Made by a program: the position numbers and the translations under genes. The notes under the pieces are model-generated. The model had not been told where the DNA came from. It did no database searches and worked only from the letters and a program-made list of their open reading frames with translations. A stretch of DNA of 63,864 nt, filler included, from Platydemus manokwari (Eukaryota): assembly GCA_037951405.1 (NCBI GenBank). It is 6 parts of 6 records of this genome, joined end to end, with 100 filler letters (N's around TTAATTAATTAA, not from the genome) between each part and the next. Parts side by side here need not be neighbours in the genome. Positions count along the whole stretch, not along the records: positions 54,230 to 63,864 come from JBBMOY011223988.1; 5 more parts are not named here. One strand, 5' to 3'. This document shows, piece after piece, positions 6,188 to 63,864 of this stretch; positions within the stretch are counted from its first letter, which is position 1, and each line of letters starts with the position of its first letter.

Positions 6188-6480
6188 ATCTGGATTCGAA
6201 TCAGAGAATATCTATAGCATGAAAATGTGAAATACTAGATCGATAGATAAATTCTCAATTAGAGAATTTTATTTAGAGATAATTATGAATACATATAAAA
6301 TCAAAGATTTAAAATAAGGAGGACGGGTGGATTTTAAAATGTATTAAAATTAAAAGGATTTGCAAACAAAATTTATTTAAAAAATATTAATTTGTTTAAA
6401 TAATTTGGTTAAAAATAATTTTATATAGTGCGACTTTTTGATTCGTTTTCAATGTGATTTAAAAATAGTAACATCATACA
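6188..6480 (+). mobile_element. TRIM family A copy: internal region, PPT and 3' LTR, degenerate
   Basis: ATCTGGATTCGAATCAGAGAA internal signature, PPT AAATAAGGAGGA at about 6312-6323, and an LTR ending AATAGTAACATCATACA. Confidence 0.6.
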
Positions 6481-10344: not shown

Positions 10345-10871
10345 TATAAACCAATACCTACTATTACGCATTGAAAACGAACTGAAAAGTCACGACACCG
10401 AATTCTGTGTTTAAATACATTTATATAAACAAATTAATATAATTTTACATAAAATTAAATATTTCAAAATTTGATTCAATTAAAATTTCTCAAATTCCTC
10501 ATTCTTTAATATTTTTGATTTTCTTTATATTTTTAATTGACATTGTATCAAATACTCTTCATATTGATCTACGTAAAAATCTCTAATTTTTCTATCTTTT
10601 TAATATCTTCTCTACATGTTTATATATTCTCTATAAAGTCTCAACATCTTCCTCGTTCTTTTCAATGATTTTCAGGCATTGATCTTCTCAGAATCGAATA
10701 CAGATGCATGATCGTCATGCTACCGCTACTATTGTATAAATTACGCATTGAAAACGAACTGAAAAGTCATGACACAGAATTTTATATTTAAATACAATCA
10801 TATACACGAATTAATATAATTTTATATAAAATTAAACATTTAAAAAATTAATTCAATTAAAATTACTCACA
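10345..10871 (-). mobile_element. TRIM family A, two-LTR copy
   Basis: Direct repeats at about 10345-10494 and 10718-10871 (TACGCATTGAAAACGAACTGAAAAGTCA...), decayed PBS TGACGATCATG next to the 5' LTR, and the internal TCTTCTCAGAATCGAA signature. Confidence 0.8.
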
Positions 10872-24013: not shown

Positions 24014-24173
24014 TGTTGAGAGGATTTTAAATTAAATTACGTTTGAGAGAATATAAAATTACATTTTCTAAAAATAACAATTTGTTTAAATAATTTTGAT
24101 TTAGATGTACTCTAGTGTTATAGCTATTTAGTTCGTTTAAAATGCGTACTTTATTAAATAGCATCGGCTTACA
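24014..24173 (+). mobile_element. TRIM family A solo LTR
   Basis: TG..GAGAGG start, AGTTCGTTT..AATGCGTA core, and an end ATAGCATCGGCTTACA matching the LTR end TAGTAGCGGCTTACA. Confidence 0.65.
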
Positions 24174-30898: not shown

Positions 30899-31244
30899 TA
30901 TGAGAGCATTTTAAATTAAAATAAATATTTTAAACATTTAATTTTGTATAAAATAACATTAATTTGTTTGAATTATTATATTTAAATATATAATTTAATG
31001 GCGCGTCCTTTCAGTTCATTTTTCATGCGTGATTTATAAAATAGTAGCGACATGCATGGTGTCCACACATCTGGATTCCATTCTGAGAAGATCAATGACT
31101 GAAAATTATGGAAAAGAAGGAGAAAGATGTTGAGATGATATAGAGAATAAAAAATAAGATGTAGAGGAGACATAAAAAGATTGGATTAATTTGTGTTTAC
31201 AGACCGTTTTCGATGCATGTTTTATAAAATATTAGCGGCTTACA
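30899..31244 (+). mobile_element. TRIM family A copy with partly deleted 3' half
   Basis: 5' LTR 30899-31056, PBS-like TGGTGTCCAC at 31057, internal ATCTGGATTCCATTCTGAGAAGA, and 3' end TTAGCGGCTTACA. Confidence 0.75.
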
Positions 31245-44420: not shown

Positions 44421-44571
44421 CGTGAGGAATTTAAAATTCAAAGATTTAATAACAGATTTTATATAAAATTATATTAATTTATTTATATAATTATAGTTAG
44501 ATATATAATTTTATGTAGTGACTTTTCTGTTGGTTTTCAACGTGTTCCTTAATTAATCGTATCAGCTTAAA
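44421..44571 (+). mobile_element. TRIM family A solo LTR, degenerate
   Basis: ATTTTATATAAAATTATATTAATTT..GTGACTTTTCTGTTGGTTTTCAACGTG..TCAGCTTA, the reverse complement of the 10718-10871 LTR. Confidence 0.6.
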
Positions 44572-47759: not shown

Positions 47760-50600
47760 GCTAATTCCTTTCGTGAGCCACGTCGTTTCATGTATGGATT
47801 TGTTGGTAAATCTTTCTTCTCAAATTTAGTCTGTAGATATTGTTATACGTCTTGTCATTATTTGCAAATTACTATGTCCCTTGCTGTAAATATGCACCAA
47901 TTGAATATCCCATTCTAATTAGTATTTCGATTTGATAACTTCTAACTGGTTACTGACATGTGTCTGTTTTGTTTGTATATCAACCGTTTCAGAGAGTTGT
48001 TCGAAATTCTTTAATCAAATTTTTACTGGTCCATTTTATCTCATTGTATACAACACTAATTGTTGACAATCTCGGGGTAAACTTCAACCACAATTGTTGA
48101 AATAGATATCTGTTCAAATTTAATAGTCCATTGTGGCATATAAACAATTATCACTGGTGATCATAACACTTTTACAAGGTGAAATCAAATCTCAACAACC
48201 TTCACGTTAAGATAAAACCTTAATTATATTGCGGGCTAATTTCGTTAGTTTACAGAACATAATGGCCTTTACGTGATCAACAATAATAGTACCAGATAAA
48301 AATTACTTTAAAAAGCAAGTTTCTTAACATCATCATATACTATTTGGTAGAATATGAAATTAATGCTTATACGCACCACATTGTATTTTTATCAATAAGG
48401 CATGAGCGGAGCCTCGAAATGAGTTTAAATTTAATTAATTTAATATTTCTATTTTCATTTAATAAACCGTTAGAAATATTTATATCTATCTTTGTTATTT
48501 TATTTATTATTTATCATGAAAAAATGGTTTGAATATTATTTAAGATGTCGTAAATTGGAAAATATTTCATACGATTGGTAATGAAAATGGGTGATGGAAA
48601 GAATCAATATAATTAATTAAGGTTTTCGACGAATCATGATTGTAAGCCCCTATTATTTTTAAAAATCGCTCAATGAAAACAAACTGAAAGTCACGATATC
48701 CAATTATACTTAGAAATACAATTATTTAAACCAAAATTTGATTTATACAAAAAAATTTATACCTAATTAAATTCTAGATAAAACGAAATTTTATATAAAA
48801 TTTAATTTGTAGAAATTTTAATTCAATTTAAAATGTTCACAATGACAGAATCAATGAACAAGATTAACGAAAAATATGCAGAATTGGTTTTGATTTTTTA
48901 TTGATTTGTGAGAGAGGTAATTTCATTAAAGCAAAGTTGAATATAACATGATCTATAATCTTTATAGAAGAATGCGTTCCCCTTGTATTTCCTGCCCTAA
49001 CTGTAACAGCAATGTACGTTTATCATTATATGTGCAATCCTGCACTGGGCGAACGTTTTGTTGTAAATGTTTTCCCTACACATGATTGTTTACTGAGGGG
49101 TTTTGACATGAACGTTCTATATGACCAAAATGTCCACATTTGTAGCATTTAATTTGTCTCTTTATACTTACGTTATAATTTTGAATAGACATACGGATTC
49201 GATATGAACTGATTTACTGTGTTTATCGCGTTGTAAATTCGGTGCAAATGCATTGACTTATTGAGTATGACCCCATTCAATGAGGTTATCATTAATGTCC
49301 TATAGCTGATTGCAATTGTTACCAAAAGTCTTTGTCGACGTATTTTTCCTTAATTGTCATTGTTAGTATTGTTATCTATATTGTTATTTGTCTCTTATTA
49401 TCACTTTACCATTTATTATTTATTATTAAACTTATTCTCTTTAGTTGCTAGTACTGTTTCGTTATTGTTTAAGTTGGAATATTCAACTTGTGCTTCGTTG
49501 CTGAAATTCGTAATCTATATGCAGATTTAATACTGTTTAAATGTTTGGAGCTAATACATCTTCAAAGTTGGTTTTTGATCATTACTTCTTTATCGTCATC
49601 TCACACAGTTCTTGGACCGAAGGTTCTTTCTACTTGTTAATTGTTAATTTGTGCACAAATTCTCGTATATATTCTCCTAGTATTCCTCTTTTTAATCTGT
49701 TTTTCTTATGATTTCTATGATTTGTTTGCCCTTCACAAGTGGAAAGTTTATATCTTTTCTACCTACTTTTATATCTTTTTCCAAATAAAACATTTTCTTC
49801 TATATCTTCTGCTTATATATATTCTAAATTGTTTATAGCTTAAAAGGTCATTTTTTTCTCCAGTTCATTTAAACTCAATGTTTTCATTGGTTGTCGAGAA
49901 TATTGTTAGTTTGAGACTGTAATATAAACTCTTAAAATCCGATAGGTAATTACATTAAATGGATTACACTCGGCTTGCTGCAGTGCCATTAAAATATGAG
50001 TTTATGCATTATGGGCTCCAAATATCTTTTATGTTATTATAAATGAAGGTCAATTTTCTCGTGCTTTTCATCTATTTACATATCAACATTCCCCACTTAT
50101 TCGTCCAAAAGTATTTTGTTCCATTATTATTGGAGTTGTAACATCAGGCTGAGTTGTCGCTATAGCCTAAAGGTTTCTCAACTTCTCTTTGACTGTTAGA
50201 CAGTCATTAAAGATCGTTATTTGATATAGTTCAAGTAATTGGAATCTGAAATTATGACTTTTACTCTGTAATACATAATTTATGTATTTGATCATCTTAT
50301 CAATAAGTAATTTCGGAAATAATTTACTTGAAACATCATTTCTTCGTAGATGAGTACTGGTTTTCTTTTTAATAATCTTTTCATGTCTATAGGTGTCAGA
50401 AAAATAGGTAGATTACTCTGTTTATGATTTTACTCTTCAAGCTTTTTAAGTAATTTATCTTTTATTATCTATTTAGCAAAATTTAGTATCAATCCACAAT
50501 TTTAGTTGACAATTACTACTAAATTGGGGCTCTCTAGTAACTGGCATAGTTACTATAAATAGCTTGTGGTTTGATTTTTTCTGCAACCATTAGGTCAATA
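47760..50600 (-). mobile_element. Decayed Ty3/gypsy-like LTR retrotransposon (gag knuckle and pol scraps)
   Basis: Intact CCHC knuckle CYKCGHFGHIERSC at 49147-49106. Flanking frames are broken and boundaries are approximate. Confidence 0.55.
48641..48841 (-). mobile_element. TRIM family A solo LTR with target-site duplication
   Basis: TGTAAGCC...TTCACA termini, GAAAACAAACTGAAAGTCACGA core, and flanks ATGAT / ATGAC. Confidence 0.75.
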
Positions 50601-54229: not shown

Positions 54230-54799
54230 GTTGGAGGCGATATTTAATTATATTAACAAATATATAGTTATTGGAATTTATTGATATTTTCTATTTATTT
54301 TGAAGAGAAATTAATGAAAAGTTCATATAATATTTACTGATCCAATATATTTTCGATCATAACGATATCAGTTGTTTTAATTGAATGACAAATATATAAA
54401 TGACATTCTTCCAATAATAAAACAAGGATAAATATTCTAAATGACTATCATAGACAAATTAATATATCAGCAATACTTCACATTCTGATTACCTGATTCA
54501 TGGAGACAAGAAATAATTATGGAGGATTCTGAGATTGCCCCATTTAATCTTATCTATGCTTATCTATATTAAAAAGTTAAAAGGCGTATATTTGAAACAT
54601 TGATTTAGATTGAGACTGTGCTGTAAAAACTACCAATCAAATATCAGAAATAGTAACAACCACACACACACAGACATACATACATATATATAATACTCTG
54701 ATTAAAAAGAGGTGTATGCGTTGTGACTTCAATTTCAATGTCTCCCTTATAAATCAGCTGTGACTTACGTACTGCCAATTTGACCAATTTGACTTCGAT

Positions 54800-55006
54800 T
54801 TTGAAAAGATCAATTTCAGAGACGTCTAGAAGAGAATTGGGAGAATATAGAAAATATATAAAGAAGATATAATGAAAATATAATGAAGATGGAAGATATA
54901 CGTATTTATAAAGATAAATATCAAGCAAATTCCGTGATAGGGATTTCATTGAGAATAATAAATAAAATCAAAAGTTTGAAGACGGGCAGATAGTAGCGGC
55001 ATACCA
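54800..55006 (+). mobile_element. TRIM family A deleted copy
   Basis: Purine-rich internal region (ATATAGAAAATAT..AAAGAAGATATA..AAAATCAAA) followed by the LTR end ATAGTAGCGGCATAC. Confidence 0.5.
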
Positions 55007-56132
55007 ACATGTTAGTAGATAATGAAGCTATGACATCGTGTATCAAATATCATTTTTTTGTGAGGAAGTGCAATAAATTTTCCTATTCCTGTAATATCTA
55101 TCATTATATAAATATGATGATAAGGTTTTATAAGCCACAAAATAGCAAAACAAATTGACCAACGAAACTAATTATAGACGGTTTAAATTAAATAATTGTG
55201 TAAAATTTCTCATTAATATCCTCATGACAGACCAACCATGTAAATCAATAGGGTGAGCCGATAATTTATCAGAAATAGAACCAATCGATAGAATCACAAT
55301 ATTGTTTACCATATCATTTGTTATACCATGACGATATCGAATGAATAAACGATAATATGAATGCTGTATGTATATCATCTCTTAATGGCGATGATTCATT
55401 GGCAAGTTTGGTCATGTTCAATGGGTTACGACGCATGAGATAGCAGACCAGTGAGTAAAGTTATTGTGATTGAATTAAGCCAGTCGTTGATTAATGTTCT
55501 AGTAAGTCTAATCGTAATTAGAAAGTGAATAATATCTGCAGGATTTCCACGAATTTCTTGTTCAACTCAATTTGTATCATTTTTCCAATTCCGATTATTA
55601 TCACTGCTATAGTGGCACGGTTACGATGGTGACAATAATCGATAATTTGTTACGCTTTGTTTCCAATGATCTGTCATTTGTTAGATCATCATATTCTAAA
55701 CATGACTAACAAATCATCATCCCGAGAAAATACTACACAGATCAACGCTCTTGGGAGTTATTTATATATATTTTCCTCCAACCAGATTACTCATGAAAAT
55801 TTGCATATTTTTCGGTGAAAATTTTATTAATAATGTTATATTGGTTATTCGGAAGTAAATAATTTGATAATAAAATGCTTATTTTTGTACAAGAAAGATA
55901 TGATATTTTCATAAACAAAACAGAAGCAGTAGTTAATCTTTTCAATTCAAATCGAACGATTTCCTTTGATCGACACTTATCCTATTTGTACCTGAATGAT
56001 ATATTAATAGCGGAGATTCTTATCTCATATTGTGGTCATATGTTGATCTTTCTCCATATTCTAAGCTCTCCAATCAAATTATAAAATTTTGACCTCTTCA
56101 TTTCCTATTTATTATTATGTTATTATAATTTC

Positions 56133-56168
<36 letters not shown>

Positions 56169-56169
<1 letters not shown>

Positions 56170-56669
56170 GTAAGCCGCTACTATTTAATAAAAAACGCAT
56201 CGAAAACGAACTGCAAAAGACTCGACATTCAATTCTCGTCAAAGACAATTATTTAAACAAAATAAATAAAATTTAATATCAAACTAAATTCAATATAAAT
56301 TCAAATTCAAATTGATATTCTCACATCCCCCTTATTAAAATCTTTGATTTTCATTGTATTCTTGTTTGGCATTTTATCGAATACTCGTAATATTCATCTA
56401 CGTAAAGCTCTCTTATTCTTCTATCTTTTATGGCTTCTCTATATCTTCTTTATATCTAATCTACATCTTTTTATATTCTTTGCATATTTTCTATATAGTA
56501 TCACATCTTTCTACTTCTTTTCCTGAATTTACAGTCATCAGTCTTCTCAGAATCGAATCCAGATGCGTGTTCGCCATGTAAGCCGCTACTATTTAAAAGA
56601 ACAAAATAAATAAAATTTAATATCAAACTAAATTAAATATAAATTCAAATTCAATTTGATATTCTCACA
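56169..56669 (-). mobile_element. TRIM family A, best-preserved copy (501 bp)
   Basis: TG..CA LTRs at 56169-56325 (157 bp) and 56577-56669 (93 bp, internal deletion). PBS TGGCGAACACG abuts the 5' LTR, PPT AAGGGGGA abuts the 3' LTR, and the 251-bp interior is non-coding. Confidence 0.9.
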
Positions 56670-58916
56670 AAGATGATCTTATATTAATAAAATTAATCAA
56701 AGTATTTTACTATCCAGTTAAATTTATCATTAAATTAAATTATTGAGACTCACTTTTCGACAAAATAACGAATTATTGCAGTCGAATCCATTGTAATTAT
56801 TTATTTAATTTATTTTAAATTGCCTCTGACCAACTGAACAGTAAAAGATAGATATTTTAAGGAAGCATAGTTCAATGGGTTTTCATTTTTATTCGAAATA
56901 ATTTGTTTAAATTTATTAACTGCTTCATTTCTATCGGTATTTATAATTTATGAGATTTCTCGTTTTTGCTGGAAAAGAAAATATTTGATTTATTTTTTAT
57001 TCATTAAAACAATTTTCATTCATATATAAACACAAAATAGACAAGTATATTTATTTATTTTTTTAAAAAATATTTATTAGAATTTGTTGATAAAATCTAT
57101 ATTTCAAATAATTATAGAGAAAAAAAGCACATAGAAAATTTTTCATCGAAAGAACTGTCCGCTAAAGGATATTTGTTCACAAGTAGAGTGTATAAGAAAT
57201 GAACTCATTGGACTATATCCAATACAATTCGGTTTATTATAGGATCTTTTCAATGATATTATGTGTAGAATATTTGACTGTGTAGAATCAAATTCTCAAG
57301 TTGCTGCATCTGAAATCATCAGAAATTATTATATTTAACGAAATTAATGTAAAAATTGATATAAAATCTACTTGCTTTATGTTTTCTTAAGAGATATAGC
57401 GGTTGTTATTGATGTTTCTGTATTTTTTTGTTATTTAATATAAAACATGTGCCACATAAAATCAGCTGATTATATGAAACAGTTTTTTATCCATCAACAC
57501 GTTCAAGTTGTTTCAAATTTTCGGTATCAAATAATGTATTGATCGAGTGAGATTTGATATGCAATGATTGTACATGGTACATTTGTTTATATGATTGGAT
57601 TAATTTTAATATTTTTCAAAATTTATAAAAATATTTTCAAGATTCTTGTCTAAATTAATAGAATATACCAATAGAATCCATTAATAGAATATACCAATAG
57701 TATATACAATATGAAATTTAATGAGAAAATATTTCCAATTCTGTTTAATCGGATTGTATTTCAACAAGATGGATGTTTTGGAAAAATATTTCTATATAAT
57801 ATTTTATAGATGATATATTATAAAATTAATAAATCGATAAACTAATTTATAATATTTTACGTATTATTTATTGTTAAAATATTCATAAGATCTGAAATGC
57901 CACCATTTTTATGTAACAACATTGATTGTTTTTGAAGTTGTTTGTTCATTATTCTCATTGTAAGGGTTTTTATTGCTGTTTCGCTTTATTTTATATATTT
58001 CTCTTAATATCTATTCATTAATGTATTTTAAATTTAATTCCTATTAAGAATTTAATTACATAAATCAAATATTAATTCTGTTCATGTTCGTTTCAATAAT
58101 TTAATAGATAATAAATTATATGTTGTGTGTTTTTTTCTAAATATTTTCTAAATGACTAAATTTTTGTTTTATATTATCAAGTAGTGTTTTTAAATAAAAA
58201 TTGATTGGATTATTATATTCTTTATGAAATGAAAAAATTTCTTTTAAAATAAAATTTTTGTTCATGGGAGCTCTTAACTGCGTTAGAACCTGACTTTGCT
58301 TGTATTACAGCTTTGCTTCACATTTTCTCTTTGGTTCCACTTGTTTGATTATTCGTCGTCGTCATGGTGATTCGACAGTTTTTGGAACTGGTCGTCATTG
58401 TCTTCTAATTCACTTGGCTCTTGATATTGCAGTAATTTCTCAAACATTGTCTTTGTTCTTTTTGGGCCATCATAAGACTGGAATAGTGTAACTCAATTTG
58501 ATGTATGAAGTTATAGAATTCTTTATAATTTCTCTAATGGTATTGTTGTTATCACGATGATTACAATTTATTACCCGAGGCTTCAATAATGAAGAATGCT
58601 TCTTCCGTTAGCAAATATCATATTCTTTATAGTTTCAAATGGGCATTTAATGGTAATGAAGATCTTCTTTTCTGTTTGATTGAAACTTTGCCACTAAATC
58701 TGTACAGGTTACAGTCCTTGTTGGCATGGATCATCATTTCGGTATATTTGATAATTTTTATTTTACGATATCAACTGTAATAATCTTACAAAATCCAAGC
58801 CTATAATTAAATTGAAAGCTGTACACTGTAGATTTTTTAATCTATTTTTCGATTCATATTAATTTTTTTAAAACCTAAGCTTAAAATACTTTAGTTCACT
58901 TTAATGTTGTGTTTAG

Positions 58917-61003
58917 GTTTTTGATATTCGCCAATGTCATCAACAAATGAAAAAAGCCAGCTCTGAAGCACAGCTTGCATGGGTACGTCAAGCAGCCGTT
59001 GTTGCTGGTAGTAGCAATTCAATTACACCATCAGTTGGAAATCAAGGATCGAATTCCATGAATAATCTTAGTGCTGCTGGAATTGGTGTCGATGACTTAA
59101 GTCCGTTTTGTGTTTTACGTTTAAGTTTCGTGAAAGGTTGGGGTCCTGACTATCCTCGACATAATATCAAAGAAACTCCGTGTTGGATAGAAATCAAATT
59201 AAACAGGTTACTCTTGATAAATTTTCAATAAATTATGAATTAATTGCTCAATATACGTCATCAAACGAGTTAAATAAAAAAAATCGATAAAAAATATTAC
59301 TACTTTAATAATTAATAAATAATAATATAATCTCAGATATCCAAGCTTCCATTTATTTATTACAGACAATTTTTTCTATAAATAAACAGGCTTAACAACA
59401 TTGAATCTGTAATCATCTCAAATATTATTTCCATAATCAATGAAATTTAGCCATTAAATCAATTTCTTGCAATATATTTCTTTTCCCAATTCGGAATTGT
59501 TTTGTCTATTTTATTAGTTTCTTGTTTTTTCTGATTTTATAAATCGAAACTCTCAGCCGATGGCAGCCAAAATTTGTCGTCAATATTTTCTCTATAAATT
59601 TGTAGTTGTTATTTCCAAGAAATTTAATGAGACTTGGTTAATTAAAAATTTATTGTCAAAATTTGTTTTATTCATATGAATTATGGGAATATAAAATTTT
59701 GTATAAGAATTTTATGTATAAAGGAGTTTTATTTTTATAAAAAATTTAACGGTGATTCAATGTCAATGAAAACGTGGTGTTTAATTTGAAGTGGGTGTAT
59801 TTTTACTTTATAAATGGTGAGGCACAATCGATACCAATAGATGAATATTCTCGAAATAATGTGAATATTTTATATAACAACATTTTACTACTGTTATTTA
59901 GATAATATTTATCAAATCATAAAATATAATTAAAATCGTATAAATGTATCTTAACTCTTTCACGGTGACATTAGGAATATGTAATACGTTTCATATTTTC
60001 ACGGGATTATCTATATTGTGTAATTATTACGTAAACAGAAATATAGCCGTAGCATGTGATAAAACCGATACTAGTTAACAATAAAATATGTTTTGAATTG
60101 CTTGTGTGTTTGCTGAAGCGGTAGTCAAAGAACTAAAGATAATCATTGAAAATTTTATTTAAAAAGTTAAAATCTAAAATATTATCACAAGTCTATTCAC
60201 CTTGAATTATTAACACGAGTACTTATTTAATATTCTTTCAAAAATGTTAGAATTAATCATTCCCAGTCTTTAAAATCGAATTTACTTTTAATATATTTCA
60301 TGGTTCCATTATTAATGTTAACAAATTATCCTTATAGCTTTATAAAAAGAGAATGATTTGGTTTAATTTATTAGGTAAATATGATTTAATTTAATCAGAA
60401 CCGGATAATACAGTGATATTAACAGAATCTATTAAAAAATTAATGAAATTAACTAAAACAGTTAAAACTTAATTAGAAACTCCTATCAAACAAGTATGGA
60501 TTTTGTCACCTGTTGGCATAATCAGTCTGAGTTCATCTTTATATGTTTTTATAAATTGTGATAATTTTTTTCAATCACTGAATATTTTCTGGTAATGCAG
60601 CCAAGCAAAAATTTGTTGTAACATATGTAAAAATGATATTACAATTTTCTAAAAACACAAGCTTTTAATGATAATTAATGAATATGAATATTAAGCGATG
60701 TGATGTTAAAATTAATAAATTACCACGGGCCTCTGATAAAAAAAGTGGGTTTTCAATTAGGTTGATATTAACCGAGTTTGACTGTATTCCAATTTGAAAA
60801 ATTATTAGAAATAATATTTATTTTATTGAGAATTATAAAACTATGTATTTCATTACTAATCATTTAGGCCATTGCAGTTACTCGATGAAGTTCTTCAGTC
60901 CATGTCCGTCAATGAATATAAACCAACGCGTCATTTCTTTGCCAATTATTATAATCAATCACAATCAGGTATGGGTCCCAGTGGTCCTATTCATCCAAAT
61001 TAA
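58917..61003 (+). CDS. smad4: Smad4/Medea co-Smad, last two coding exons (58917-59206, 60868-61003)
   Basis: [11 protein letters not shown]...[42 protein letters not shown]|[12 protein letters not shown] is the Smad4-specific MH2 C-terminus. It has no SSxS tail and spans a phase-2 GT-AG intron. Confidence 0.95.
60759..60786. mobile_element. Orphan pogo/Tigger-type TIR in the Smad4 intron
   Basis: Reverse complement TA-CAGTCAAACTCGGTTAATATCAACC. Partner TIR not found. Confidence 0.4.
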
Positions 61004-61721
61004 TATTTTGCAATCAGTCAGCTATAACAATTTAGTTTAAATAATATATATTGTTTATATTCGCGTCGACTTCAATCAAAGCGTTGTTCGACAATATGAT
61101 GATTTATTTAGCCATTATCCAATAATAATAATAATCATGACGTACCGATTTATAAAACGATGTTTTACTTTTTTCAAATGAATGAATACTACTTGTAATA
61201 TTTGTAATTAAATTGATTTTGTTTATTTTTAAATAAATTTGGTTTTTCATAAATAGAAAAATTCGTTTTCTATAACAAAATATGCATGACATTGAAATAG
61301 ACCATCAGTAATAATTGTCTTCAAATCAACATATGGTGATATTATTTGGATTGTTTATTAGATTAATATCAACATATTTACACCGATTCAGAAATAAACA
61401 AACTTTGTAAATAAAAAACCATAGTACGAAAATAATAGTGAAGGCACATTAAAACATAAAATATATTAAATTACAATAACGAAAAGATAAATTTCAGATT
61501 AACGAAAAATGTATTTTGTTACATGATTACATAATTGTTCACACAATTATTGTAAGCTTATACTTTATTCTTGATGAGATATTTTGAAAAGATTCAATAA
61601 TAATTGTATATATCGGTAAGGATAAGAATGATTTTTAATAATCTTAACATTTGTAAATGACATTTAAATAGAATGATCAAATCGAAAAGCGCATTGATGT
61701 AAATTTTATAAAAAATAAATG

Positions 61722-63661
61722 TTAAACAATTTTGGTGAGATCTGATATTTGTTCTCGATTTGTATCTTCAATGTTACTTGGATGATCATCAATCATTGTT
61801 GAATTATTCACACTATTTGATGTTCCAGGTTGTGATTCATCTATTTCGAAAGACAGATTTTCTAAAAATCATTAATGCAATTCGATATTAATTAGAATAT
61901 TGAAGTGAAAATAAATCAGAGATATAAATGTGTAAATGACATAATTATAAAAGACACAACATACATTGAAACCAATACATGATCATATCGTTTATAAAAT
62001 GACGCTTAACATCATCGAAATGGTTGACAAAAAGGTGGTCAACATTAAATGATATAGTTGGTATTCGTAAATACCAATGACTTCTTATTCAATCTGGTGA
62101 CAGGTTTATTATACATGAAATTAGTTTACGAGTAAATTGCACATCCGTGACGCAGGGGTTTGATCAGTATGTCTCTTTCATTTGGCTAATTTATTTATCA
62201 TTTATTTTGTAAAAAAATCAAAAGATTCAGTATTGTCAAATAAAACTACAAAATGGATTTTAATTGTCACAAATGTCGTTGCAAATATAAACAAATAATA
62301 ATTATGGAGACTCTAATGAATATATTTTTCTCGATAAAAGTTTCAGATCGATTGAATGACTCTGCGCGTAATAGAAGATTTTATAAATGATAAACAATAA
62401 TAAATTTACATTTATTAACGGAATGGTATTAATAAAATCACATTAAATTCGCTATATAATCGCAAATATAAGGGGCATGAAACAAAAATAAAGCTCCAGC
62501 ACGTATTCCTGATCGAGTGGTAAGTATTAAGTAAATATTGCTAAAAAATGACCGTGGATTATTATCCAAAAATTATCGATTTTTTAAATGTAAAATTAAT
62601 GTTCATATCTAACATTGATGAGTAGCAACGACTAATTAACTGGACTATCGGTGGATTAATGGAATGATATTAATAGAATCGTTCACATTAAATTCGTTAT
62701 GTAATCACAAATATAAATGGATATGAAACAAAATGAAGTTATAACATATATTGATGATTGGATGGCAAATAAGGTAAATATTGCTAAAAAATGACTGGAT
62801 TATTATCCAAAAATTATCGATTTTTTAAATGTAAAATTAATGTTCATATCTAGCATTGATGAGTAGCAACGACTAATTAACTGGACCATCAGTGGATTAA
62901 TCGTTCACATTAAATTCGCTATATAATCACAAATATAAAAGGACATGAAACAAAATGAAGTTATAATACATATTGATGATTGGATGGCAAATAATAAGGT
63001 AAATATTTCTAAAAAATGACTGGATTATTATCCAAAGATTATCGATTTTTCAAATGTCATATTAGTGTTCCTATCTAATATTGATGAGCACCAACGACTA
63101 CTTAACCCGACTATCAGTGGATTATTTGTTGCAAATGTCATTGGTTCACAATCAACAAACCATAACCACTCTTAAAATTCCTTTTATTCATTGTCAGTTG
63201 GTCTTATATTTATAAAAATATGTTTTTATTGAGATTTATATTGTATTATTAAATTTCTATATTTCTATAACATTAATAATAATCATATAACAACAATGTA
63301 AACAACGCGTTTCAACACAAATCATATTTAATCCAGATCAACTCCATATAGCGATAAGCAAATACAATAACAGAAATATATCAACTAAATCTACCATAAC
63401 AATTATTTGAAACTTGATTTTGTTCTTCTGGAATGAATTGTACATCGCTTTCATTGTTGCTTACATAGCTTGATAAACTAGGAATTCGAGAATTGATCAA
63501 TGGTGTTTGCTCATTAATAACGGTTTGACGACTTTGTTGTGGAGAACCATCTCCACTATCCGCATCATCATCACGTCCTGGAATTTTAATTCTGTATTTA
63601 CATATTGGGCAATTCCGTTTCTGTCTCAATAGCCATGGATCAATACAATTGCAATGATATG
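61722..63661 (-). CDS. RNF13/RNF167 (godzilla)-like RING-H2 E3 ligase, last two exons (63661-63395, 61861-61722)
   Basis: AYHCNCIDPWL.RQKRNCPICK RING-H2 half, acidic/Ser tract, and EQTPLI dileucine motif (compare RNF13 EHTPLL). A phase-1 splice leads to ENLSFE...LTKIV*. Confidence 0.8.
62420..63125. repeat. Tandem repeat, three copies of about 220-245 bp, in the RING-gene intron
   Basis: CACATTAAATTCG at about 62439, 62684 and 62906. TGGATTATTATCCAAA, ATTGATGAG and CAACGACTA recur in each unit. Confidence 0.9.
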
Positions 63662-63864
63662 CTAAATATTAAAGCAAATTGGTGGTGAAATATTTAATAT
63701 AGCAATTTATATCAATATTCATTTCATTACAATCATATCATGAAATTATTAACAATGGAATATATATATATATATATCAACGTATCAATAAAGAGCAGTC
63801 ATTTGTGATTTTATCAATTATGCAATATATTAATGTATACATTTATACTTTCCTATATTGTGTA

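What the first reader, a model, noticed from the sequence alone, without database searches (positions are those of the whole stretch)
56169..56669. Miniature non-coding LTR retrotransposon (TRIM) family present on all six independent pieces
Seen: a 501-bp element with TG..CA LTRs, a PBS, a PPT and no ORF. Relatives lie at 6188-6480, 10345-10871, 24014-24173, 30899-31244, 44421-44571, 48641-48841 and 54800-55006, about one per 8 kb, as full, deleted and solo-LTR forms. The PBS consensus of three copies (TGGCGAACACG, TGACGATCATG, TGGTGTCCACA) is TGGCGACCACG. Knowledge: this complements the CGUGGUCG-CCA end of some Arg tRNAs. TRIMs are common in plants but rarely described in animals, and the taeniid ta-TRIM is expressed in stem cells. 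Inference: a very high-copy, possibly undescribed, parasite of an Arg-primed gypsy element.
Basis: partly seen in the sequence, partly recalled or inferred. Interest (0 to 1): 0.78.

Follow-up and report, generated by a model that had tools for sequence, protein, structure and literature searches.

The report
Small non-coding LTR retrotransposon (TRIM) copy
This is a decayed 501-bp copy of a miniature, non-coding LTR retrotransposon (a TRIM), with a much older relative 1.2 kb away. It is an ordinary genomic parasite of a kind already described in several animal groups.

Summary
The element spans 56169-56669 and reads on the minus strand.

- **Repeats:** two terminal direct repeats begin TG and end CA. 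They are unequal, 93 nt and 157 nt. They differ at 2 of 93 aligned bases, and 64 nt are present only in the longer one.
- **Primer site:** TGGCGAACACG abuts the 5' repeat. It matches 10 of 11 bases of the complement of a published human tRNA-Arg(UCG) 3' end.
- **Purine tract:** AAGGGGGA abuts the 3' repeat. It holds the only G5 run in the 9.6-kb piece.
- **Coding:** the element has no coding capacity.
- **Second copy:** an older relative at about 54722-55006 (+) is about 65% identical. It is collinear through the repeat end, the region after the primer site, the interior and the purine tract. The compact interior is therefore a family trait.

It is not ta-TRIM, PbTRIM, Helenus, Cassandra/Ajax or a retrozyme. 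Arg-primed animal TRIMs are already published. Verdict: probably a new member of a known kind, of modest interest.

The parts
56577..56669 (-). 5' LTR (short form, 93 nt), starting TGTGAG and ending CTTACA
   Evidence: Direct repeat of 56169-56325. There are 91 matches and 2 mismatches over the 93 aligned positions. Similarity stops exactly at the TG and CA ends.
56566..56576 (-). Primer-binding-site-like sequence TGGCGAACACG, flush with the 5' LTR
   Evidence: Read directly. CGCCA occurs only twice on the + strand of the piece. The site matches 10 of 11 bases of the complement of a human tRNA-Arg(UCG) 3' end printed in bioRxiv 10.1101/2021.02.06.430044.
56326..56576 (-). Internal domain, 251 nt including PBS and PPT, 68% purine on the sense strand, non-coding
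   Evidence: ORFs are 21-77 aa and low-complexity, with no Pfam hit. The RNA fold z-score is only -1.5. The domain is collinear with copy 2.
56326..56333 (-). Polypurine tract AAGGGGGA, flush with the 3' LTR
   Evidence: It holds the only G5/C5 run in the 9,635-base piece. The per-position chance of a G5 run is about 3.7e-5.
56169..56325 (-). 3' LTR (long form, 157 nt)
56189..56256 (-). 68-nt span in the 3' LTR holding the 64 nt that the 5' LTR lacks
   Evidence: The global alignment places the missing 64 nt as one or two gaps here, with 4 aligned bases between them. The span has no Rfam or tRNA match.
54722..55006 (+). Second, ancient and degenerate family member. It has an LTR-end-like CTTACG at 54764-54769, an interior, a PPT-like GAAGACGGGCAG at 54978-54989, and then only the last ~17 nt of an LTR (ATAGTAGCGGCATACCA, 54990-55006). 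The start is tentative.
   Evidence: blastn gives 67% identity over 147 nt (E 7e-10) and 62% over 239 nt (E 2e-6). The alignment score is 129-142 against a shuffle maximum of 101.5. The LTR-end motif is exact.
56109..56168 (.). (ATT)n microsatellite abutting the 3' LTR end. It is flank, not element.
   Evidence: TRF reports period 3 and 20.7 copies. It may have erased a target-site duplication.

Best explanation
The interval holds one structurally complete but decayed copy of a terminal-repeat retrotransposon in miniature (TRIM), a non-autonomous LTR retrotransposon.

**Inferred life cycle** (from the established LTR-retroelement mechanism):
1. An RNA runs from the 5' LTR into the 3' LTR.
2. 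The RNA is packaged by the Gag/Pol of an autonomous LTR element encoded elsewhere in the genome.
3. A host tRNA, most likely an Arg isoacceptor, anneals to TGGCGA(A/C)CACG and primes minus-strand DNA.
4. The AAGGGGGA tract primes the plus strand.
5. The partner's integrase recognises the TGTGAG...CTTACA ends and inserts the cDNA.

**State of this copy:** it is probably dead. Its LTRs differ by 64 nt of indel, its PBS has one mismatch to the Arg pattern, and it lacks a target-site duplication. It may be a recombinant of two elements.

**Family age:** a much older family member lies 1.2 kb away in the opposite orientation. The family has therefore lived in this genome for a long time.

**Shown versus inferred:** the anatomy and the second copy are shown here. 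Transcription, trans-mobilisation, tRNA identity and the partner element are inferred.
For: - The two repeats are bounded exactly by TG and CA, and their ends form an imperfect inverted pair, TGTGAG and CTTACA.
- TGG follows the 5' LTR with no spacer. The composition-based chance is about 0.006.
- The single G5 run in 9.6 kb lies inside an 8-purine tract flush with the 3' LTR.
- The element is 501 bp with a 251-nt interior, and its ORFs have no Pfam match.
- Copy 2 is collinear across the LTR end, the region after the PBS, the interior, the PPT and the LTR end. Its alignment z-score against shuffles is about 6.
- The PBS matches a published tRNA-Arg(UCG) 3' end at 10 of 11 positions.
- The size and layout fit the published TRIM definition (PMC6934838; PMC10886601).
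Against: - Neither copy has a target-site duplication. The 5-nt flanks match at 3 of 5 positions, which is chance level in DNA that is 74% A+T.
- The LTRs are unequal in length.
- Only two copies could be seen. Family size, solo LTRs and young copies are unverified.
- The tRNA match is to a human sequence, not the host's, and it does not extend beyond 11 nt.
- No autonomous partner was seen.
- Other LTR-like matches in the piece (54240-54302, 58010-58130, 59230-59370) score no better than the A+T-rich background.
Confidence: 0.8

Rival explanations
1. The copy is a recombinant or chimeric TRIM. It arose by recombination or gene conversion between two family members that carried short and long LTR variants. 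It would then not be a pristine single insertion. This refines the best explanation and does not replace it.
For: - The LTRs differ by 64 nt of indel yet by only 2 substitutions in 93 aligned positions.
- The flanks show no target-site duplication.
- Inter-element recombination is the classical cause of both features.
Against: - A post-insertion deletion in one LTR could explain the length difference.
- Growth of the adjacent (ATT)n microsatellite could have erased the duplication.
- No short-LTR or long-LTR subfamilies could be sampled.
Confidence: 0.3
2. The element is a one-off internal-deletion remnant of an autonomous LTR retrotransposon. It would not belong to a dedicated miniature family that transposes as such.
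For: - Internally deleted LTR elements are common.
- No young sister copies or duplications are available to prove that the 501-bp form itself transposed.
Against: - Copy 2 is about 35% diverged and in the opposite orientation, yet it has the same compact interior between the PBS-side and PPT-side sequences.
- The interior shows no trace of gag or pol in ORFs or in Pfam.
Confidence: 0.1
3. The element is not a retroelement. It would be a chance or local A-B-A partial tandem duplication in A+T-rich, low-complexity DNA.
For: - The repeats are A+T-rich, and similar-scoring A+T-rich matches occur elsewhere in the piece.
- There is no target-site duplication.
Against: - Several independent features coincide exactly at the repeat boundaries: the TG and CA ends, TGG plus a tRNA-like 11-mer, and the piece's only G5 run inside a purine tract.
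- A separate diverged copy keeps the same order of parts.
Confidence: 0.04

Closest known systems
PbTRIM of ants (Pogonomyrmex barbatus; PMC3532108)
   Same: An animal TRIM of 480-781 bp with short LTRs (152-184 bp) and a non-coding interior. The PBS is flush with the 5' LTR and the PPT lies before the 3' LTR. It inserts in A+T-rich DNA.
   Different: PbTRIM has a Leu-tRNA PBS of about 15 nt and clear 4-bp duplications, often ATAT. Here the PBS is Arg-like, the LTRs are 93 and 157 nt, and no duplication is present. No PbTRIM sequence was available for a sequence comparison.
ta-TRIM of taeniid cestodes (PMC4558846)
   Same: A non-autonomous LTR element in an animal, with TG..CA LTRs, a PBS and a PPT. 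It has many decayed copies and solo LTRs.
   Different: ta-TRIM has LTRs of about 198 bp and an interior of about 590 bp. Its 9-nt Leu-tRNA PBS lies 4 nt from the LTR, its 15-nt PPT lies 3 nt from the LTR, and it makes 4-bp duplications. It was reported as restricted to taeniids. None of these specifics fits here.
Helenus / Ajax / Cassandra (TRIMs with a pol III promoter; PMC10886601)
   Same: TRIM architecture. Hymenopteran Helenus families include tRNA-Arg-primed ones, with an Arg-primed Gypsy counterpart (Gypsy-31_NVi).
   Different: Those families carry a tRNA-like or 5S-like sequence in the LTR. ARAGORN and Rfam find none here.
Plant TRIMs (as summarised in PMC6934838 and PMC3532108)
   Same: Total size under 1 kb, terminal direct repeats of about 100-250 bp, and an interior that starts with a PBS and ends with a PPT.
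   Different: Plant TRIMs use a Met-tRNA PBS and make 5-bp duplications. The host here is an animal, as the conserved Smad4 gene shows.

Membership tests
TRIM (terminal-repeat retrotransposon in miniature) | Total length under 1000 bp | tested here: met
   501 bp, 56169-56669.
TRIM (terminal-repeat retrotransposon in miniature) | Two terminal direct repeats of roughly 100-250 bp that begin TG and end CA | tested here: met
   The repeats are 93 and 157 nt, with 91 of 93 aligned positions identical and TG..CA ends. The short one is slightly under the usual range, and they differ by 64 nt of indel.
TRIM (terminal-repeat retrotransposon in miniature) | PBS complementary to a tRNA 3' end, directly downstream of the 5' repeat | tested here: inconclusive
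   TGGCGAACACG is flush with the LTR. It matches the complement of a published human tRNA-Arg(UCG) 3' end at 10 of 11 positions. Host tRNAs are not available, and the piece has no tRNA gene.
TRIM (terminal-repeat retrotransposon in miniature) | Polypurine tract directly upstream of the 3' repeat | tested here: met
   AAGGGGGA is flush with the 3' LTR and holds the only G5 run in the piece.
TRIM (terminal-repeat retrotransposon in miniature) | No coding capacity in the internal domain | tested here: met
   Only short or low-complexity ORFs, with no Pfam hit at E<=1.
TRIM (terminal-repeat retrotransposon in miniature) | Target-site duplication of 4-5 bp flanking complete copies | tested here: not met
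   The flanks are ATCTT and ATAAT in sense orientation. Copy 2 has none either. Only one complete, non-young copy was available, and one flank is a microsatellite. This weakens but does not exclude membership.
TRIM (terminal-repeat retrotransposon in miniature) | Dispersed multi-copy family sharing the same interior | tested here: inconclusive
   Two copies lie in 9.6 kb with a collinear interior. Genome-wide copy number is not testable. Two metagenome scans gave 0 hits, and the genome-contig scan gave only hits on bacterial contigs, at about the number I estimated by chance.
TRIM (terminal-repeat retrotransposon in miniature) | Autonomous partner with the same LTR ends and PBS | not testable with these tools
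   No other sequence from this genome was available. The piece contains no reverse transcriptase or integrase.
ta-TRIM (taeniid cestodes) | LTRs of about 198 bp, a Leu-tRNA PBS 4 nt from the LTR, and an interior of about 590 bp | tested here: not met
   Here the LTRs are 93 and 157 nt, the PBS is Arg-like with 0 nt spacing, and the interior is 251 nt.
PbTRIM (ants) | Leu-tRNA PBS of about 15 nt and 4-bp duplications | tested here: not met
   The PBS differs and no duplication is present.
Helenus / Ajax / Cassandra (TRIMp3) | tRNA-like or 5S rRNA-like sequence inside the LTR | tested here: not met
   ARAGORN found 0 genes. Rfam at E<=5 has no hit inside 56169-56669.
Retrozyme | Hammerhead ribozyme in the terminal repeats | tested here: not met
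   No hammerhead match in the Rfam scan at E<=5.

The most novel reading that the evidence does not exclude
This may be one copy of an uncatalogued, abundant, tRNA-Arg-primed TRIM family in an A+T-rich animal genome. The lineage may be one where TRIMs have not been described. The family would be long-lived, since an ancient copy and a fairly recent one sit side by side. Like ta-TRIM, it might still be transcribed and might influence neighbouring genes such as Smad4.
Probability: 0.3. Interest if true: 0.45.

Novelty: new member of a known kind. Interest (0 to 1): 0.3.

Why it matters
If the family proves abundant and uncatalogued, it would add one more animal lineage to the short list with described TRIMs. 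It would also provide a handle, through the LTR ends and the Arg-type PBS, for finding the autonomous element that mobilises it. TRIM copies and solo LTRs can donate promoters and splice sites to nearby genes. A dense family would therefore matter for annotating this A+T-rich genome. As a single decayed copy it changes nothing about how LTR retroelements are understood.

Tried and rejected
No runs were therefore available, and read laying was not used.

**Searches that found nothing**
- Exact-pattern scans for the LTR end and for the PPT/LTR-start junction gave 0 hits in metagenome contigs.
- An 18-mer of the LTR end gave 13 hits in genome contigs, all on bacterial or MAG contigs. This is about the number I estimated by chance (roughly 17, my own arithmetic). 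The one contig with two hits is a bacterial hairpin.

**Attempt to identify the host**
- A word search with the Smad4 exon found only MH2 fragments of at most 85% identity and no near-identical protein.
- The organism therefore stays unknown, and I could not compare the element with a species repeat library.
- I did not run the large representative search, because the protein is not open.

**Ideas tested and dropped**
- A third LTR fragment at 54240-54302, and LTR-like matches at 58010-58130 and 59230-59370, all score within the A+T-rich background.
- The GGATTCGATTC stretch after the PBS could be extended complementarity to a tRNA T-arm. It is out of register by 2 nt with a canonical tRNA, so I do not claim it.
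- The interior RNA has no unusual stability (z -1.5).
- A further upstream Smad4 exon was sought with relaxed tblastn. Only weak, probably chance matches at E of about 0.1 appeared.
- The sigma-70 promoter scan is irrelevant to a eukaryote.

I built no consensus of the family.

Full report
**Scope.** Only places 54230-63864 of the window were available. That is 9,635 bases with 26% G+C and no N. No other sequence from this genome could be obtained.

**1. The observation**

Reading the sequence and the repeat finder show a direct repeat at the two ends of 56169-56669. The element reads sensibly on the minus strand, as follows.

| Part | Coordinates | Detail |
|---|---|---|
| 5' LTR | 56669-56577 | 93 nt, TGTGAG...CTTACA |
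| PBS-like site | 56576-56566 | TGGCGAACACG, no spacer after the LTR |
| Interior | 56576-56326 | 251 nt including PBS and PPT, 68% purine |
| PPT | 56333-56326 | AAGGGGGA, no spacer before the LTR |
| 3' LTR | 56325-56169 | 157 nt, same ends as the 5' LTR |

- A global alignment of the two LTRs gives 91 matches and 2 mismatches over the 93 aligned positions. A further 64 nt are present only in the 3' LTR, placed as one or two gaps within 56189-56256.
- Similarity ends exactly at the TG and CA.
- The junction features are not chance. C5 on the + strand (G5 on the element's strand) occurs once in the whole piece, at the PPT. CGCCA occurs twice on the + strand, once at the PBS.
- Composition-based chances are about 0.006 for TGG and 3.7e-5 for G5 at a given position.
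- ORFs in the element are 21-77 aa, low in complexity, and have no Pfam match at E<=1.

**2. The second copy**

- blastn of the element against the piece finds one region clearly above the A+T-rich background, at 54746-54986 on the + strand. It gives 67% identity over 147 nt (E 7e-10) and 62% over 239 nt (E 2e-6).
- A local alignment scores 129, and 142 in the best window. Dinucleotide shuffles give 74.5 +/- 8.8 with a maximum of 101.5. All other windows of the piece, on either strand, score at most 96.5.
- The alignment is collinear. It runs from an LTR-end-like CTTACG (54764-54769), through the region after the PBS and the interior, to a PPT-like GAAGACGGGCAG (54978-54989). Then comes only the last ~17 nt of an LTR (ATAGTAGCGGCATACCA, 54990-55006).
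- The motif TAGTAGCGGCNTAC occurs three times in the window, twice in the element and once here, where 0.00 are expected.
- The copy probably starts at a TGTGAC near 54722, but that part is too decayed to be sure.
- Its PBS is unrecognisable, and it contains a 9-bp tandem duplication.
- This ancient copy shows that the compact interior is a family trait. It is not a private deletion in one element.
- Other LTR-like matches (54240-54302, 58010-58130, 59230-59370) score no better than the background, and I do not count them.

**3. What argues against a clean insertion**

- No target-site duplication is present. In sense orientation the 5' flank ends ATCTT and the 3' flank starts ATAAT. A 3-of-5 match is chance level at 74% A+T.
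- The 3' flank is an (ATT)n microsatellite that begins exactly at the LTR end (56109-56168).
- Two readings fit the unequal LTRs and the missing duplication. The first is a deletion in the 5' LTR combined with microsatellite growth over the duplicated site. The second is recombination between two family members with short and long LTRs.
- I cannot separate these two readings with one copy.

**4. The primer**

- The piece has no tRNA gene, and the host tRNA set is out of reach.
It also found the matching Arg-type PBS tggcgaccacgaagggac discussed for HERV9 (PMC4724089).
- This copy's PBS complements it at 10 of 11 positions. The match does not continue into the T-stem part.
- The stretch GGATTCGATTC after the PBS resembles the complement of a T-loop, but it is 2 nt out of register with a canonical tRNA. 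I leave it as an unexplained resemblance.
- Arg priming is a reasonable inference. It is not a result.

**5. How it most likely works**

From the established LTR-retroelement cycle, as summarised in PMC4558846 and PMC10886601:

1. Transcription runs from the 5' LTR into the 3' LTR.
2. The RNA is packaged by proteins of an autonomous element encoded elsewhere.
3. A tRNA primes at the PBS.
4. The PPT primes the plus strand.
5. Integrase acts on the TGTGAG...CTTACA ends.

All of these steps are inferred. Only the cis-anatomy is shown here. Nothing here points to gypsy rather than BEL/Pao or another superfamily. This copy is probably inactive.

**6. Comparison with known families**

- The element fits the published definition of a TRIM: under 1 kb, terminal direct repeats of about 100-250 bp, and an interior starting with a PBS and ending with a PPT (PMC6934838). 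The exception is the missing duplication.
- It is not ta-TRIM. That family has 198-bp LTRs, a Leu PBS 4 nt from the LTR, an interior of about 590 bp, and is reported as restricted to taeniids.
- It is not PbTRIM, which has a Leu PBS and 4-bp duplications.
- It is not Helenus, Ajax, Cassandra or a retrozyme. ARAGORN and an Rfam scan at E<=5 find no tRNA-like, 5S-like or hammerhead sequence in the element.
- TRIMs are on record from Hymenoptera, taeniids and bivalves. The same paper adds nemerteans (Ajax) and fish (Helenus). Hymenopteran Helenus families include Arg-primed ones alongside an Arg-primed Gypsy (PMC10886601).
- An Arg-primed animal TRIM is therefore a new member of a known kind at most.

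**7. Context and host**

- The piece carries the last two exons of a Smad4 gene on the + strand, at 58917-59207 and 60866-61000 (Pfam MH2 E 1.9e-18).
- It also carries a RING-H2 exon on the minus strand, at 63384-63668.
- The element lies 2.2 kb upstream of the penultimate Smad4 exon, antisense to it. No earlier Smad4 exon was found in the piece. Whether the site is intronic or intergenic stays open.
- The word search with the Smad4 exon found no near-identical protein. The best hit was 85% identical over half the exon. Full-length alignments were to trematode fragments at about 47%.
- The organism is an unidentified animal, and no species repeat catalogue could be consulted.
- Exact scans for LTR-end and PPT/LTR-start strings gave no metagenome hits and only bacterial-contig hits, at about the number I estimated by chance.

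**8. Verdict**

- The structure is real and is best read as a decayed TRIM copy with an ancient sibling nearby (confidence 0.8).
- The lack of a duplication is a genuine weakness.
- Interest is modest (0.3).
- I built no consensus of the element.

Noticed in passing
window 58917-59207 and 60866-61000 (+): These are the last two exons of a Smad4 (co-Smad) gene. The first matches the Pfam MH2 domain at E 1.9e-18. The intron sits at the conserved ...LNR|PLQLLDEV position. The C-terminal tail after LQSMS is unusually long and divergent.
   Followed up: partly
window 63384-63668 (-): An exon encodes the end of a RING-H2 finger (HCNCIDPWL...CPICK; zf-RING_2 E 4e-4) followed by an acidic, Ser-rich C-terminal tail. 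It converges on the Smad4 3' end.
   Followed up: partly
window 62438-63124: A tandem array of 2.9 copies of a 225-bp unit (82% matches, TRF score 858) lies between the Smad4 and RING genes. It has no ORF of note, and its nature is unknown.
   Followed up: no
window 56109-56168: An (ATT)n microsatellite of about 20 units starts exactly at the element's 3' LTR end. It may have overwritten the target-site duplication.
   Followed up: partly
window 58352-58492 (-) and 61725-61868 (-): Two open frames have coding-like amino-acid composition, with an ILFYNK fraction of about 0.35 against 0.5-0.7 for the background. Neither has a Pfam match. They may be exons of unannotated genes on the minus strand.
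   Followed up: partly
window 55575-55706 (+) and 61648-61710 (-): Weak tblastn matches (E about 0.1) link Smad4 MH2 fragments to these sites (IDNLLRFVSNDLSFVR; YKIYINALFDLIILFKCHLQM). They are probably chance. Decayed Smad4 exon or retro-copy fragments are not excluded.
   Followed up: partly
window 56544-56565 (-), just after the PBS: GGATTCGATTC, which is conserved as GACTTCGATTT in copy 2, resembles the complement of a tRNA T-loop. It is 2 nt out of register with a canonical tRNA 3' end. It may be a relic of a longer PBS or a second tRNA contact.
   Followed up: partly
window 57657-57711: A 13-bp unit (AATAGAATATACC) is repeated 4.3 times in tandem.
   Followed up: no
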